Counted from the stretch's first letter, positions 16,192 through 23,954 are shown. The stretch is 64,000 nucleotides of DNA from Neoconidiobolus thromboides FSU 785 (GCA_025603075.1 MU626293.1:76466-140465), one strand, 5' to 3'. Translations and numbers: made by a program. The notes: generated by a model not told the origin, from the sequence alone.

Positions 16192-16716
16192 CAATTATTA
16201 AGTTATAGCTCTAGTTTAGAAGAGGAAGAAAAAAAAAGAGAAGTTTGTCCTTAACTGCAGTGATAATATTTCAATTAATATATTAAGTGATGAAAAATTA
16301 GTTCAATATCCCCTTAATATAACCTCAATATCTAGTTCATATTCAGTGGATGCATATTAATAGAGCCGACTTTTCTTCATTTACTACTTTACTTCACTAA
16401 ATATCATAATTAAGTTTTCATTATTTCTTTTTTCTTAGACTCAAAAAGGCTATAACTAAAAAACCACAAACAAAAAAATAAGAATATATTAATATATTAA
16501 TTCCCTTTTTTTAAAATAAAAGTTCATTTTTGAATTAAAAAGCTATTCTTTATTTTAAAATAAACACCTTCTTTTGTTAAAAACTTGGAAACTAGTACGA
16601 AAATTCAATCTCTTTCCACACTAATACCTACCATCACCTTCAGCCTTAACATTTATTCTAAAACTATTGTTTACTATACCGTTTTTTATTGCAAAATACC
16701 CTTTATCACTCCCCCT

Positions 16717-19700
16717 TTAAACCTTATCAAATGCGCCTTCTGTTGGTGTAAAATATTCAGAAGATACATCGTCTTCTGAAGGAGTAATTGAGGGTAACTT
16801 TAAACTCAATGGAATTGGTGAAAGTAATGTTGATTTTTGAATCTCTTTTCCAATCTTTCCTTTAAATCCCATGATACCAACTCCTAATCGATCTGTCAAC
16901 TTAGCTAATAGATCTTGAACTTCTTCCGACACCCCTATTGTCCCATCATTTTTTGCTTTTTCCATAAACTTACTCACTACTATTCTTCGAATCGCATTTT
17001 CAATTCTTATTATCAAGGATTCTAATAAATAAATTAACTCTTGTTCACTGGCTTCTTCTTTAATAGAAAATGTAAAAAACCCATATAATGAATCAATTCT
17101 TGATTTCTTTTTACTTAATACTTGATCACTCGCTAATCGTTCGATTCGCATACATAAATAACCTACCAACTTAACTAAATTACTATCAATTGTTTTGTTA
17201 TTCTCAGAGATATTCAATGGGATTTCTTCTTTTGGTGACATGGCAGACAAATAAAACTCATGTCTTCCAATTAATGATTTGGGATAAATCTAATTTAAAA
17301 TAAACAACTATTAATTACTTTTATCAACCCTATCAAGCAATATTTCAACTTACCATCGATAATACCTCTGGATTTTCTAACCCCGTTAATTTCATTTCCC
17401 CTAAATTAAACATTTGGTACCCAATTTTACGTAACATTCGAACATCCCTAGGTATATTAACTGCCAATTGATTTTCATTACATTCCATAGGAAATTGTAA
17501 ATCCATCAATTCAATCTCTTTGACTACATCTGCCGATACACAAATCTGACCCCCATCTGCTGCTGTACAAATAGAATCCGATCTTTTTACCATGTAACCT
17601 AAATAATCCATACGATGAGTTACTGGATCGGGTTCACAAACTGGGGTACCAAAATGAATTCCCATTCTAACCGATAATCCACGATAAATTAGCTCTTTTG
17701 GACCATTGGGACGATACACTTCTTGACATTCTGAAGAATCTAATATTTCTTGTGGCCAATCTAAATCTAATAGATGAACTTGCATGGTCAAACACCATAA
17801 TAAGGCAGATGCTACCGTTGGAAAAGCGGCTCTAAAAGCATCCCCTTCCGTTTTAACTTCATAACCACCTAAGCTAATTAGCCATCGACGCATCGATAAA
17901 TTATGAGATTTAACAGCAAATCTCATAGCGGTTGGAAAAGTTTCCCATAAAAATGTAGAATTTTTAATATCCGTAAATACTAAAGCTACTTTTCCTGTAG
18001 GTGCTTCATCATTTTTACTACCTAATCGTGCTAATTTTGAACTACCTGGCCCCTGTTGTCGCCATCGATTACGTCGATAAGAAATGGCCAAATTACTATC
18101 ATCTATATTTCGTGATATGTTATTATTACTAATTTCCATACTAGTATCTCGAAATGCAAATAAATCATTAACACCAATAATCATTACTGAAACGGAATCT
18201 TTACTACCATATGTAATAGCAAAATCTCTCACTTTTTGAGCTGCTACCATTAAGTTATCCGATTCCATACGAGCTACATCAACAGCTGTTTGATATGTCA
18301 TTTTATCCCATAAGGATCTTGTAGCTAATATGATAAATTCATCATTTTCAGTTAATTCAATTTTTTCAATTGATGGATTAGCATTAACCAAAGGTGCTAA
18401 ATGAAAATGTCCAAATCCTCGAGATATTTCTAATTCTCCATTTAATAACCCTTGTGATGAAATAAACCCTTTGTTATTTCGAATTCGACTAATTTCTTCA
18501 ATACTCCAAGGAGTATGTCTTTTTGATAACAAATTATATTTTCCTGCATTACCACACAATACAGCTACTGTATCTCCAACATTAGCTACATATAATGTGG
18601 ATCCTGTGATGTAAGCTACAACCCCAGATGCTCCTAAATTACCATTTTCATCCATGGTAGTTGAACCTAATTCTTTATTTAAATTTAAAAAAGTTCTTCT
18701 TAAAGCATCTTTAACATTTCCACCTTCTTCTTTATTTTGTTTTTTTAATTCATCATCTAAATAAGCTTCTAAATGATCATTTAAAAATTTAGCTACTCTT
18801 GAACCTGAACCAGATCTGGATGTATGTCCATCAAATAAAGCAAATAAAGATACCTCATCTCTACCTTTAAACTGTCTTATACTTTTATCCCATGTCCATA
18901 TTTTGTCCCACATATTTGAAGTATCTGAAGAATCAATAACATTTAATTTATCAGCAATACCATAACTAATTCTTCCTAATTGAGAAGGATCTGTTCTGAC
19001 CCTTCTATCTGATGTTTCATTAGGTGCATCCACCATTAAAGTAACATCCATTAAACCCAATGCCCTTAATTGATTTAAATTATTAAAATCAGGTAAATTA
19101 AGGTGAGAAAAAGTCGAGTTTTCAGATAAATTATGTTTAATTTCTAACCTCTTATTACCAGATAAATTTAAATATCTCAAACCTGTATTCCAGTTCCAAT
19201 TCCAATCATAAGGAAAATTACATATATTATATTTTAAAGCATTATTACCAACATCCAATGTAAATAAACCCCCTAATTTTCCTAATTCTGCAGGTAATGT
19301 TTGTAATCGATTACTATTTAAATATAATCCTCTTAATCCTCTTAATCTTTCTAAATCTTCTGCAGGTAATGTTGATAACTGATTTCCAGATAAATAAAGA
19401 TCTGTTAAATTTGATAAATTTATTAAAGATCCTGATGGTATTTCATCTAGAATATTATAACTTAAATTCAATACTTTTAATTCTGTAAAAAACGAAATTG
19501 AAGTAAATACATCATCTGTCAATCGATTATCTCCTAAAAATAACTCTCTTAATGATAATGATAATGGTGGATGGATTAATTCATCTGAATTTGTTGATGC
19601 TGTTCTATTTAAATTATTATTATTATTATTAGGTTGTATTAATGGTCTTGGGAATTCTTTTAATAAATTTGAACTAGCATTAAATATTGTTAATGAGCCT

Positions 19701-21949
19701 AATAGCCAAATTTCTGAAGGTAATGAACTAATATTATTATCATGTAAATCTAGAAATTTCAAACTATTTAATGAAGAAATATTAGCAATAATTGAACTTA
19801 ATTCGTTATTAGAACAATTTAAACTTTGTAATTTAGTTAAATTACCAATAGATGGTGGTAATAATACTAATCGATTATTGTCTAAATTCAGTTCTTCTAA
19901 ATTGGGTACAAAATTAAACAAATCATCCGGTAAACTAACTAGTTTTGAAAATGATAAATTCAAACACGTTAATGTTAATAATGGATTAGCTGGTTGAATT
20001 ATTTTTGTAATTGAATTTTTAGAAATAATTAATCGATACAAAGATTGAAAATTCAGTTGTAATGTCGATATAAAATTATAATCACATAATAATAATTCCA
20101 AATTTGGCAAACTACTTAACGAATCTAAATTATTTAATTGATTTTTTCTTAAATCTAACTCCCTTAATTTAGATAGTTGACTTATTGATTCTGGTAAACT
20201 ACCAACAATTCGGTTGGATATTAACAATAATTCTTGTAAATTAACCAATTGATTAATAGTGGAGGGTATAACTTTAATTTCATTGAACGAAATATCCAAA
20301 TGAATTAAATTAATTAAATTAGTAATAACAGATGGAAATAATGAAAATCGGTTATTAGATAAATTCAACTTCTTTAAATTAACTAATTTCGAAAATTGGG
20401 AGGGCAAAATTTCAATTCGATTATTGCCTAATAATAATGAATTTAAACTTTTTAAAGATTCTAATTTGGAATAATGAATAGATTTAATTCTATTACTAGA
20501 AAGATCCAAAAAAGTTAATGTTGTTATTGCTTTAATACATTCTGGTACGTTTTGTAATTCACATCTTGATAATTTCAACTCTTTTAAAGCTGAACAATTA
20601 GCAAAAAACTCAAAAGTTAAATCAATCACTAAATTTTGACTTAAATTTAAACTATGGACTTGATTCGCATGTCTCATTAAATTTTGGGGGATTTTTCGTA
20701 AATTTTTGGCTCTTAAATCGACATGCTGATAATTAGGTATTTCTTGATTCTAAATTAAATAATAAAAATAAATATTACAATATATTATTAAATTACTATT
20801 ATTATTATTAACTAAACTTACATCATCCATACAACAATTTCTACTATAATCAAAGATAAATTTAAAATAATAAGAATTATCTTCTCTACCAATGTTACGT
20901 AAATCATCCCTTGAAGTATAACCAATTTTTTCTAACATTCTTTTTAATATAACTAATGGTCTTTCATCACTTGTAAGTTCCCTTTCTAAAATTCGTCTTA
21001 TTAATAAAATAAACCACCATTGCATTATATTATATTATATTATCATAAAAAACAACTCATATCTCAAATTTTATAAAAAAAATTATTAATTCAAACTATC
21101 AACTTACCAATATTATGCTTCCTTAGATACAATGCATATGGTGATACATCATTTACAAAAAACTTTTTCGCTAATGGAATCAACAGTTCACTCGCTTTAG
21201 TTCTCAAAGAACAATAAACCGTTGCATACGTATGATCTGGTTTAAACACCCTAATTCTATACTGAAATCGATCATCTCCTTCTTCTTCATATAATGTATC
21301 TTCTGTTATCCATCCACGATCATTTTCAAATTGAGATACTTCGGGTATAGAGGTAATATCATCAGCTATTAAAGCGGAAGTTGTTGGGGATACTACTACC
21401 CCATTGCGTTTTAGACTGTTTAAGGATTCTGAGCTTGGTTTACGTTTATTATTGTTATTGTTGTTAATCGTGTCTATTGTCAGCATATCTGGAGGTACTA
21501 CATCGTCTAAAGAAATTAATGCAATAAATAAAATAAAATAGATAAATTTAAATCAACTTACCACTCTCCACTTTAGCAATCTATATTATTTTAAAAAAAA
21601 CCGACATTTAATTTTTTTTAAAATATTTAAAAAAAAAGCTTACCAACGCTTCAATTTCTTTTGCATCCATTTGAGAGTTTAATAATTTTGAAAACTCAGT
21701 ATCAGAACCTCGTCTTCTTACACGTTGTAATAAAGTACTTCGATCTTCTTTAGATAATTCAGTGTCTGAGCATGAACTTAATCGCTTCTTTTTGCTACTA
21801 GTTTTTGTAGAGGGCGGCTCTTCTATTTATTTATAAATGGAATTCAAGTATTAATTATGTTGATTTAGAAGTAAGACAAGAGAGGGGATGAAACAATACT
21901 TACCTATAATTTTATCTTTGTTCTTTCGTCTTGGGAATGGGAATTTCAT
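16717..21949 (-). CDS. CYR1: Fungal-type adenylate cyclase (G-alpha-binding/RA, LRR, PP2C-like, class III cyclase), about 7 exons; catalytic N/R substituted
   Basis: Exons run from MKFPFPRRKNKDK (21949) through YRIRVFKPDHTYATV, ERPLVILKRMLEKIGY, many LRRs, FALFDGH (PP2C-like), VFTDIKNST, YEVKTEGDAF, SVRMGIH and RMDYLG. The last exon ends at 16717. ORFs 21091, 20750, 17345 and 16717 are parts of this gene. Confidence 0.93.
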
Positions 21950-22966: not shown

Positions 22967-23954
22967 TTATTGCCACGTAAATGGAGCTTTATAATCATAG
23001 CCGTTGAAATTTTGGATTTGGTTTAATAGTTCATTATAATCTTCGGAAGTTGTAATTAATTTTCGACTACCTTCACTGATAAAACCCTCTATTTTTAGAA
23101 AATTAGTAAACATTTAAGCTTCAATTTGTAATCCTTATTAATTTACCTTTTAATCCATGCTCTAACAAACTATCAAAAATACTATAGAAATTATTAGTGT
23201 TAATTAAGCCCAAATACTTGTTATGGATGGATAATTGATTCCTAAAATGATAATAATAAACAATAAAGAAATAAAGTAATTAGAAACTAATATTTACCAA
23301 GTAGCCATTTCCATAATTTCTTCAAAGGTCCCTAATCCACCTGGAAGCGCTAGAAATGCAAATGACTGATATGATACAAGTTAACTCATATCTCTTCAAA
23401 ACAAAAAAACACTTACCAGTCTAGCCATTAATTTTTTCCTTTGATGCATATCTTTGACTAAGATATTTTTATAGGCAAAGTCCACTTTACAAAACTCTCT
23501 AAACCCCCAAGGATAAATACTAATTACTTTACCTCCTTCAGAAGCAACCGACTTAGCTACAGCTCCCATTAAACCTCCATTACCACCACCTTTGAAGGGA
23601 GATATTAGTTTTTTTTAATGTAATATTTTATTTAATATACCATAAACTAAACCATAGCCTCGTTTTACCAACTCTTTACCTAAAGCTGTTTACGGAGAGG
23701 GGGAATTTGTATTAGTATTTAATTAGTAATTGAAGTTTATTCTTACCAATAGCTACTCTTTCGTATTCTGGATCATTTCCCAAACCGGAGCCGCAAAATA
23801 CACAAATAAAGTGTTGATTTAAAGATTGGACTTCTTGAACTATATGCTCTTGTTCCTCTTCCAAGGTTAAGTTTTCTAATTGTTTATTACTGGACATTCT
23901 ATTAGTTTTGTTTTTGTTTGAAGATAATTTTTTTAATTTTGATTTTGATTCCAT
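22967..23954 (-). CDS. LOG-family nucleotide phosphoribohydrolase (lysine-decarboxylase-like), about 6 exons
   Basis: ICVFCGS, LVYGGGNGGLMGAVA, MHQRKKLM and the signature LPGGLGTFEE (PGGxGTxE) across spliced exons; ends YKAPFTWQ*. Confidence 0.88.

What the first reader, a model, noticed from the sequence alone, without database searches (positions are those of the whole stretch)
17570..17990. Adenylate cyclase with catalytic Asn and Arg replaced: possible pseudo-cyclase or C1-like half enzyme
Seen: the motif reads RMDYLGYMVKRSDSICTAADGGQI (codon aaa at 17585-17587, tct at 17573-17575). Known: fungal class III cyclases have RMDY(L/Y)GPMVN-x-A-(A/S)-R, where Asn and Arg stabilise the transition state. 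Here N->K and R->S, while both metal Asps (FTDI, EGDA) and the adenine-specifying Lys and Asp (EVKT, RMDY) remain, along with an intact RA-LRR-PP2C scaffold. Inference: it may be weak or inactive as a homodimer, acting as a scaffold or dominant-negative paralog. Alternatively it could supply the metal-binding half in a heterodimer, as mammalian C1 does with C2.
Basis: partly seen in the sequence, partly recalled or inferred. Interest (0 to 1): 0.72.

Follow-up and report, generated by a model that had tools for sequence, protein, structure and literature searches.

The report
Adenylate cyclase missing two catalytic residues
The main cAMP-making enzyme (Cyr1) of the insect-pathogenic fungus Neoconidiobolus thromboides and its Entomophthora relatives has lost two residues that are invariant in 212 other fungal Cyr1 enzymes, yet its catalytic domain is strongly conserved, so the active site was remodelled, not decayed.

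Summary
The gene on the minus strand (16717-21949) is the RA-LRR-PP2C-cyclase adenylate cyclase of Neoconidiobolus thromboides FSU 785. It reads K (AAA, 17585-17587) and S (TCT, 17573-17575) where 212 of 212 other fungal Cyr1 domains have Asn and Arg. Contigs from other sequencing runs, one of them a spliced transcript, carry the same codons.

It is not a private defect, and no evidence makes it a spare paralog. Entomophthora muscae, Massospora cicadina and an unnamed relative share K and S/A. These four form a clade sister to the canonical Conidiobolus coronatus Cyr1. No canonical copy was found for these species.

The cyclase domain is the most conserved domain of the protein. The new residues K1324, D1327 and R1242 persist through synonymous codon turnover. 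Both metal aspartates, the P-loop and the adenine-binding Lys and Asp are intact.

My best reading (about 0.45) is a C1-like half-enzyme that needs a complementary partner. An unchecked scan note (s1-263665) reports a second cyclase in this genome that lacks a metal aspartate, but I could not retrieve it. The rivals are a rewired active homodimer and a nucleotide-binding scaffold.

The scan also noted this same stretch as s1-263622.

The parts
16717..21949 (-). Whole Cyr1-type adenylate cyclase gene (1591 aa, identical to the NCBI protein of Neoconidiobolus thromboides FSU 785). Exons are approximately 21949-21905, 21823-21644, 21507-21109, 20985-20822, 20749-17354 and 17289-16717 (including the stop).
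   Evidence: Exact mapping of P0001 onto the window; identical protein found; introns seen as GT..AG joints in transcript contigs.
20822..21507 (-). Ras-association (RA_3) domain, split over two exons by the 122-nt intron 20986-21107.
   Evidence: Pfam PF23010 hits on both ORF pieces; the joint is seen in X4 and X5 contigs.
19040..20677 (-). Leucine-rich repeat region (bounds approximate).
   Evidence: Pfam LRR_8 (E 2.5e-43), LRR_4 and LRR_14 hits.
18191..18877 (-). PP2C-like domain.
   Evidence: Pfam PF00481, E 5.2e-56, ORF residues 601-829.
17477..18001 (-). Class III cyclase catalytic domain (protein residues 1186-1360).
   Evidence: Pfam PF00211, E 9.2e-20. AlphaFold2 model with pLDDT 90.2. 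Foldseek top matches are T. brucei GRESAG4, Ma1120, Rv1900c and CyaB cyclases.
17585..17587 (-). AAA = Lys1324, at the position of the ribose-orienting transition-state Asn.
   Evidence: Asn in 212/212 other Cyr1 domains and Lys in all 4 clade members. The codon is AAA or AAG across the clade.
17573..17575 (-). TCT = Ser1328, at the position of the transition-state Arg.
   Evidence: Arg in 212/212 others; Ser, Ser, Ser, Ala in the clade.
17576..17578 (-). GAT = Asp1327, a new acidic residue on helix alpha4.
   Evidence: Others have Ser or Ala (210/212) and never an acidic residue. Asp in all 4 clade members, coded GAT or GAC.
17594..17596 (-). TAC = Tyr1321 at the start of helix alpha4.
   Evidence: Pro in 211/212 others; Tyr or His in the clade.
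17831..17833 (-). AGA = Arg1242, three residues after the second metal Asp (EGDAF-R).
   Evidence: Met in 206/212 others. Arg in all 4 clade members, coded AGA, CGC or CGT.
17876..17878 (-). ATT = Ile1227, near the C-terminal end of the long helix that precedes strand beta2.
   Evidence: Arg in 212/212 others; Ile or Met in the clade. Helix 49-69 of the model.
17384..17386 (-). ACG = Thr1391 in place of the 'LKG' Lys, a change private to N. thromboides.
   Evidence: Lys in 197 of 198 ungapped others and in the other 3 clade members. Run X9 has the synonymous ACA. The match to Lys1065 of mammalian C2 is from my own knowledge.
17969..17971 (-). GAT = Asp1196, first metal-binding Asp (FTDIKNST), retained.
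   Evidence: Invariant in all 216 sequences.
17840..17842 (-). GAT = Asp1239, second metal-binding Asp (EGDAF), retained.
   Evidence: Invariant in all 216 sequences.
17852..17854 (-). AAA = Lys1235, adenine-specifying Lys (EVKT), retained.
   Evidence: Invariant in all 216 sequences.
17606..17608 (-). GAT = Asp1317, adenine-specifying Asp (RMDY), retained.
   Evidence: Invariant in all 216 sequences.
17290..17353 (-). 64-nt intron just after the cyclase domain.
   Evidence: GT..AG joint in contigs of X4 and X5.

Best explanation
This is the Cyr1 adenylate cyclase ortholog of the Neoconidiobolus + Entomophthoraceae lineage. After the split from Conidiobolus coronatus, one face of its catalytic domain was remodelled and then frozen by selection. 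That part is shown. The face that donates the two metal aspartates and the phosphate-binding loop is untouched. The opposite face, which in a head-to-tail dimer reaches into the partner's site, lost the transition-state Asn and Arg. It also lost a further basic residue at 1388 and, in N. thromboides alone, the 'LKG' Lys. It gained Lys1324 and Asp1327. Mammalian C1 likewise supplies the metal aspartates but not the transition-state residues. From this I infer that two copies of the protein cannot build a canonical active site. It would act as the metal-donating, C1-like half of a heterodimer. The other half would be a second cyclase-domain protein that supplies Asn, Arg and Lys, giving one catalytic site and one degenerate, possibly regulatory, site. 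The partner is not shown.
For: The substitutions are real and the gene is transcribed and spliced. They are shared by Entomophthora muscae, Massospora cicadina and a Logan transcript, and absent from 212 other Cyr1 domains, including C. coronatus KXN69054.1. The four proteins form one clade (100/100) that is sister to the C. coronatus Cyr1 (99/97). No canonical Cyr1 from these species appeared. The cyclase domain is the slowest-evolving domain: dN is 0.03 against 0.11 for LRR and PP2C between Entomophthora and Massospora, and 0.17 against 0.30 between Neoconidiobolus and Entomophthora. Of 29 listed differences in the large exon, 27 are synonymous. K1324, D1327 and R1242 are kept through synonymous codon changes. 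D1196, D1239, FTDIKNST, K1235 and D1317 are invariant. [quoted passage not shown] Fungal precedent exists for heterodimeric class III cyclases in the chytrid RGC/NeoR pairs (PMC12264004 abstract). As an unchecked lead, scan note s1-263665 reports a second cyclase in this genome with FTSIKNSK in place of FTDIKNST, which would be the complementary defect.
Against: I never saw the partner. It was absent from the best 120 hits of three word searches and from the best 150 of the representative search, which reached down to 217 bits. Whether it keeps Asn and Arg, and whether Entomophthora and Massospora have one, is unknown. Strong conservation of helix alpha4 in its new form (KRSDS/A) shows that this face still does something, which an active rewired site would also explain. 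No dimer model or activity assay was possible. The residue-by-residue comparison with mammalian C1 (Lys and Asp kept, Asn and Arg replaced) is recalled from memory and was not checked here.
Confidence: 0.45

Rival explanations
1. Rewired but active homodimer. Catalysis continues without the canonical Asn/Arg pair. Lys1324, one helical turn before the lost Arg on the same face of helix alpha4, and/or the new Arg1242 next to the metal site would supply the positive charge for the transition state.
For: This is the only Cyr1-type protein found for these species. Every other catalytic residue is invariant. The changes look like paired swaps: Asn...Arg becomes Lys...Ser, and Arg1227...Met1242 becomes Ile/Met...Arg. 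The new residues are under purifying selection. Unchecked scan notes suggest that cAMP-pathway genes persist in the genome.
Against: Asn and Arg are 212/212 invariant in other Cyr1 enzymes. From my own knowledge, mutating them in mammalian and mycobacterial class III cyclases cuts kcat by one to two orders of magnitude. The same face also lost the basic residue at 1388, gained acidic Asp1327 and, in N. thromboides, lost the LKG Lys, which suits triphosphate binding poorly.
Confidence: 0.25
2. Catalytically dead pseudo-cyclase. The domain still folds, dimerises and perhaps binds ATP and metal, and is conserved as a scaffold or sensor within the Ras/G-protein/CAP complex. cAMP, if made at all, comes from another enzyme.
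For: Two to four catalytic or phosphate-contacting residues are lost. Pseudoenzymes that keep ligand binding can be highly conserved. The RA, LRR and PP2C modules are intact.
Against: It does not explain why both metal aspartates, the P-loop and the adenine Lys and Asp stay invariant across genera whose synonymous sites are saturated. It also does not explain why the cyclase domain is more constrained than the scaffold domains.
Confidence: 0.2
3. Sequencing or assembly error, or a decaying gene under relaxed selection.
For: None was found.
Against: The same codons occur in contigs of several independent runs and in a spliced transcript. The same residues occur in three other taxa. The reading frame is intact. 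The differences are overwhelmingly synonymous, and the cyclase domain has the lowest dN of all domains.
Confidence: 0.02

Closest known systems
Canonical fungal Cyr1/CYR1 adenylate cyclase (nearest canonical relative here: Conidiobolus coronatus NRRL 28638, KXN69054.1)
   Same: It has the same RA-LRR-PP2C-cyclase architecture. It is the sister group in the tree. The cyclase domains are 57-59% identical. Metal aspartates, P-loop and adenine Lys and Asp are identical.
   Different: The transition-state Asn becomes Lys and the Arg becomes Ser or Ala. Further clade-specific changes are P1321Y/H, M1242R, R1227I/M, E1182N/D and a new D1327, plus a private K1391T. All of these sit at positions that are 97-100% conserved elsewhere, except 1327, which is Ser or Ala elsewhere.
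C1 domain of mammalian membrane adenylyl cyclases (and, from my own knowledge, the alpha subunit of soluble guanylate cyclase)
   Same: It supplies the two metal aspartates but not the transition-state residues. It is active only when paired with a complementary domain, and the second site is a pseudo-site (PMC4174876; PMC2576301).
   Different: C1 and C2 are two halves of one polypeptide with a known partner. Here the domain sits in a protein family that normally works as a homodimer, and no partner has been shown.
Chytrid rhodopsin-guanylyl cyclase / NeoR heterodimers
   Same: These are fungal class III cyclases that evolved to work as heterodimers of paralogs (PMC12264004 abstract).
   Different: They have a different architecture (rhodopsin fusion), a different product (cGMP) and belong to a different phylum. 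Their heterodimer is shown experimentally, whereas here it is inferred.
Trypanosoma brucei GRESAG4.1/4.3 cyclase domains (PDB 1fx2, 1fx4)
   Same: They are the closest solved structures by sequence (E 5e-19) and by fold (Foldseek E 7e-17). The motif order is the same.
   Different: They keep Asn and Arg (SNMAAR) and belong to receptor-type proteins.
Mycobacterium tuberculosis Rv1625c point-mutant complementation (own knowledge: Guo et al. 2001, not read here)
   Same: A homodimeric class III cyclase in which a mutant lacking a metal Asp and a mutant lacking the Arg are each nearly inactive but regain activity when mixed. This is the laboratory analogue of the proposed natural pair.
   Different: Those are engineered mutants of one bacterial protein, not natural paralogs.

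Membership tests
Class III nucleotidyl cyclase catalytic domain (Pfam PF00211) | Sequence and fold match to the family | tested here: met
   Pfam E 9.2e-20, 71.4 bits against a cutoff of 21.9. AlphaFold2 model with pLDDT 90.2. Foldseek probability 1.00 to many solved class III cyclases.
Class III nucleotidyl cyclase catalytic domain (Pfam PF00211) | Two metal-binding aspartates | tested here: met
   D1196 (FTDI) and D1239 (EGDAF) are present and invariant.
Class III nucleotidyl cyclase catalytic domain (Pfam PF00211) | Adenine-specifying Lys and Asp | tested here: met
   K1235 (EVKT) and D1317 (RMDY) are present and invariant.
Class III nucleotidyl cyclase catalytic domain (Pfam PF00211) | Transition-state Asn (ribose-orienting) | tested here: not met
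   Lys1324, where 212/212 other Cyr1 domains and GRESAG4 have Asn.
Class III nucleotidyl cyclase catalytic domain (Pfam PF00211) | Transition-state Arg (phosphate-binding) | tested here: not met
   Ser1328, where 212/212 other Cyr1 domains and GRESAG4 have Arg.
Class III nucleotidyl cyclase catalytic domain (Pfam PF00211) | Phosphate-binding Lys of the 'LKG' motif in the beta7-beta8 region | tested here: not met
   Thr1391 in N. thromboides. Lys in 197/198 ungapped others and in the three other clade members.
Fungal Cyr1 orthogroup | RA-LRR-PP2C-cyclase domain order | tested here: met
   Pfam hits in that order along the gene.
Fungal Cyr1 orthogroup | Placement within the Cyr1 tree in line with the species relationships | tested here: met
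   The clade has 100/100 support and is sister to the C. coronatus Cyr1 at 99/97.
Fungal Cyr1 orthogroup | Adenylate cyclase activity as a homodimer | not testable with these tools
   This needs an enzyme assay or genetic complementation.
C1-type half-site cyclase domain (heterodimer subunit) | Metal-binding face intact and transition-state face degenerate | tested here: met
C1-type half-site cyclase domain (heterodimer subunit) | A partner in the same genome with the complementary defect (no metal Asp, but Asn and Arg kept) | tested here: inconclusive
   Only an unchecked scan note (s1-263665: FTSIKNSK) points to one. No such protein was retrieved.
C1-type half-site cyclase domain (heterodimer subunit) | Physical heterodimer with one active site | not testable with these tools
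   No multimer prediction or biochemistry was available.

The most novel reading that the evidence does not exclude
A homodimeric class III cyclase that still makes cAMP, or a different product, without the canonical Asn/Arg transition-state pair. It would use relocated basic residues instead: Lys1324 on helix alpha4 and Arg1242 beside the second metal Asp. This would be a new catalytic solution fixed in a whole lineage of insect-pathogenic fungi.
Probability: 0.2. Interest if true: 0.8.

Novelty: new variant of a known kind. Interest (0 to 1): 0.62.

Why it matters
Cyr1 is the central cAMP source in fungi and controls growth form, nutrient sensing and, in many pathogens, virulence. Its catalytic residues are treated as invariant. 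Here the apparently sole Cyr1 ortholog of an insect-pathogenic lineage (Neoconidiobolus, Entomophthora, Massospora) lacks two of them and is nevertheless under strong constraint. If it pairs with a complementary paralog, this would be an independent natural origin of the asymmetric C1/C2 design of animal cyclases from a symmetric ancestor, with the canonical sister lineage (Conidiobolus coronatus) still available for comparison. If it is active alone, it shows that the Asn/Arg pair can be replaced. Either outcome can be tested with simple recombinant assays. A full-text search found no paper that discusses it.

Tried and rejected
1. I hunted for the partner or paralog in four ways. These were a word search on the cyclase region, a word search on the full length, a search with the domain alone for short proteins, and the exhaustive representative search (best 150 down to 217 bits). 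None returned a second N. thromboides, Entomophthora or Massospora cyclase or any FTSIKNSK protein.

2. The only FTSIKNS hit, P0446, belongs to Mortierellaceae, not to this genome.

3. The odd multi-domain hits were looked up. They are euglenozoan, Capsaspora or basidiomycete proteins and are irrelevant as partners.

4. A tblastn of the cyclase domain against the whole window found no second copy.

5. dN/dS between genera could not be computed because synonymous sites are saturated (pS at or above about 0.75). I report dN by domain instead.

6. I wanted to measure the Arg1242/Ile1227 and Lys1324 geometry in the AlphaFold model, but coordinates are not exposed to scripts. The 'residue swap' idea therefore stays an inference.

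7. Literature searches on Entomophthorales and adenylate cyclase found nothing relevant.

Full report
**What is there.** The window is AT-rich (19-31% GC). On the minus strand a 1110-codon open frame (17345-20677) carries LRR repeats, a PP2C domain (E 5e-56) and a class III cyclase domain (PF00211, E 9e-20). Two upstream ORF pieces carry the halves of an RA_3 domain. The joined product is identical to a 1591-aa NCBI protein of Neoconidiobolus thromboides FSU 785. Its exons map to roughly 21949-21905, 21823-21644, 21507-21109, 20985-20822, 20749-17354 and 17289-16717.

**The observation.** The motif RMDYLGYMVKRSDSICTAADGGQI is present. AAA at 17585-17587 codes Lys1324 and TCT at 17573-17575 codes Ser1328. 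A phmmer alignment to the closest solved structures, T. brucei GRESAG4.1 and 4.3, places these two residues on the Asn and Arg of SNMAAR. Both metal aspartates (D1196, D1239), the P-loop FTDIKNST, and the adenine Lys1235 and Asp1317 are intact.

**Check against other sequencing runs.**
- A 4119-nt contig of run X4 matches 16621-17289 and 17354-20749 without a single difference. It skips 17290-17353 with GT..AG ends on the coding strand. Two further introns (20750-20821 and 20986-21107) are also skipped, in this and another X4 contig and in X5. The gene is therefore transcribed and spliced as modelled.
- Contigs of two other organism labels (X5, X9) cover 17345-18022 with 5 and 12 differences. 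All are accounted for in the difference table, and none lies in the Lys or Ser codon.
- Of 29 listed differences in the large exon, 27 are synonymous.
- These are assembled contigs, not raw reads.

**It is a lineage trait, not a private defect.** Among the best 120 cyclase-domain relatives, every sequence has G-P-x-V-N-[RK]-x-x-R except a Capsaspora protein (Arg for the Asn) and four proteins that share Lys and Ser or Ala:
- N. thromboides: GYMVKRSDS
- Entomophthora muscae: GHMVKRSDS
- Massospora cicadina: GHMVKRSDS
- an unnamed Logan transcript, SRR29032805: GHMVKRSDA

In an alignment of 216 Cyr1 cyclase domains, the 212 others have Asn 212/212 and Arg 212/212. Conidiobolus coronatus (KXN69054.1) is canonical. 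A maximum-likelihood tree of the PP2C and cyclase region (34 rows) recovers the four K/S proteins as one clade (100/100). That clade is sister to the C. coronatus Cyr1 (99/97) and needs one change of state. The protein is thus the Cyr1 ortholog of Neoconidiobolus + Entomophthoraceae. No canonical Cyr1 of these species appeared in any of four searches. A canonical copy would be expected to score about 290 bits, as the C. coronatus protein does, and so to be listed.

**It is selected, not decaying.** Between genera the synonymous sites are saturated, so I compared dN by domain.

| Comparison | Cyclase domain | LRR / PP2C | C-terminal region |
|---|---|---|---|
| Entomophthora vs Massospora, dN | 0.03 (95% aa identity) | 0.11 (81-83% identity) | 0.23 |
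| Neoconidiobolus vs Entomophthora, dN | 0.17 | 0.30 | 0.83 |

The cyclase domain is the slowest-evolving domain in every pair of the four proteins. The new residues are themselves conserved through synonymous turnover: Lys1324 is coded AAA or AAG, Asp1327 GAT or GAC, and Arg1242 AGA, CGC or CGT. In the cyclase-only tree the stem of the clade is long (0.55) but the branches within it are short. This pattern fits a burst of change followed by constraint.

**The anatomy of the change.** Of 91 columns that are at least 90% conserved in the 212 others, 73 are unchanged in all four clade members. The shared departures cluster in three places.
- On helix alpha4 and its entry: F1319L, P1321Y/H, N1324K and R1328S/A, together with a new Asp1327 where the others have only Ser or Ala.
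- On strand beta3, next to the second metal Asp: M1242R and V1243A.
- Near the C-terminal end of the preceding helix: R1227I/M.
- E1182N/D, D1172S and a one-residue insertion lie in the lead-in to the domain.

The basic residue at 1388 (Arg or Lys in 82% of the others) is Met or Ile in the clade. N. thromboides alone has Thr1391 where 197 of 198 others have the 'LKG' Lys. From my own knowledge, that Lys corresponds to the phosphate-binding Lys1065 of mammalian C2.

One face of the domain is therefore untouched: the metal aspartates and the P-loop. The face that would reach into the partner's active site has lost two to four ribose- or phosphate-contacting residues and gained an acidic one. It keeps the adenine-binding Lys and Asp. 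The AlphaFold2 model is confident (pLDDT 90.2), and its nearest solved folds are class III cyclases.

**Mechanism.** In class III cyclases the two domains form a head-to-tail dimer. [quoted passage not shown] The pattern here is that of a C1-type domain.

My leading reading (0.45) is that the protein cannot form a canonical site with itself. It would serve as the metal-donating half of a heterodimer with a complementary cyclase-domain protein.

The scan holds an unchecked note (s1-263665) of a second cyclase elsewhere in this genome that reads FTSIKNSK instead of FTDIKNST, which would be the mirror-image defect. A second note describes a cyclase linked to a phosphodiesterase, each with a non-canonical site (s1-264085). 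I could not retrieve either protein, so they remain leads and not evidence.

The rivals are:
- A rewired but active homodimer (0.25). Lys1324 and/or Arg1242 would replace the lost Arg. The paired look of the changes (Asn...Arg to Lys...Ser; Arg1227...Met1242 to Ile/Met...Arg) speaks for it. The net loss of positive charge on that face speaks against it.
- A dead but ligand-binding scaffold (0.2). This fits poorly with invariant metal aspartates and with the cyclase domain being more constrained than the scaffold domains.
- Error or decay (0.02). This is rejected.

**Novelty.** A full-text search for Entomophthorales together with adenylate cyclase found nothing relevant. One-sided degenerate cyclase domains are well known in animals, and heterodimeric class III cyclases exist in chytrids (PMC12264004). 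A Cyr1 ortholog of this kind, fixed in a whole lineage with no canonical copy found, appears to be undescribed. I rate it a new variant of a known kind. The same stretch was also noted by the scan as s1-263622.

**Seen in passing.** Mirror-image or fully degenerate Cyr1-like genes occur elsewhere.
- A Mortierellaceae gene has both metal aspartates replaced but keeps Asn and Arg (P0446, locus L004).
- A Stereum hirsutum paralog reads FTELKHS in place of FTDIKNS.
- A Tulasnella protein lacks the first Asp, the Asn and the Arg.
- Many Cyr1 orthologs in NCBI carry the wrong product name 'cysteinyl-tRNA synthetase'.

Noticed in passing
L004:7077-10723 (Logan SRR5822173 contig; protein piece P0446): A Cyr1-like gene (LRR, PP2C and cyclase pieces) has both metal aspartates replaced (FTSIKNST, EGEAM) but keeps the Asn and Arg (GSMVNRSAR). 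This is the mirror image of the defect studied here. The tree places it in Mortierellaceae, and the motif alignment shows it most resembles Entomortierella chlamydospora P0204, which is canonical.
   Followed up: partly
P0351/P0359 (Stereum hirsutum EIM87040.1 cluster) and P0356 (Tulasnella sp. 417 KAG8928661.1): These are degenerate Cyr1-type proteins in Agaricomycetes. The Stereum one reads FTELKHS (first metal Asp replaced by Glu) and keeps Asn and Arg. The Tulasnella one reads FTGIPNS and GAMVGRSAQ, so it lacks the first Asp, the Asn and the Arg. Both sit on long branches.
   Followed up: partly
P0447 (JGI, 238 aa fragment): A Cyr1-like cyclase fragment of unknown origin reads GGFVARTSR, with Ala in place of the transition-state Asn. 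It sits on a long branch.
   Followed up: no
window 17384-17386: N. thromboides alone has Thr1391 (ACG; synonymous ACA in run X9) in place of the nearly invariant 'LKG' Lys. The other three K/S-clade proteins keep the Lys. This lineage therefore went one step further in degrading the same face of the domain.
   Followed up: yes
Protein names (for example P0004, P0006, P0008): Many Cyr1 adenylate cyclase orthologs in NCBI, including those of Entomophthora muscae and Massospora cicadina, carry the product name 'cysteinyl-tRNA synthetase'. This looks like a propagated annotation error.
   Followed up: no
window 22967-23954: A scan note (s1-256057) reports a LOG-family enzyme gene just upstream of the cyclase gene. 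I did not examine it. ORFs of 57-80 aa lie there.
   Followed up: no
Multi-domain hits (for example P0224-P0238, P0248, P0251): Protist proteins (diplonemid, euglenid, Capsaspora) carry 2-6 tandem Cyr1-like cyclase domains. Individual domains lack a metal Asp or the Asn/Arg pair, which looks like internal pseudo-heterodimers.
   Followed up: partly
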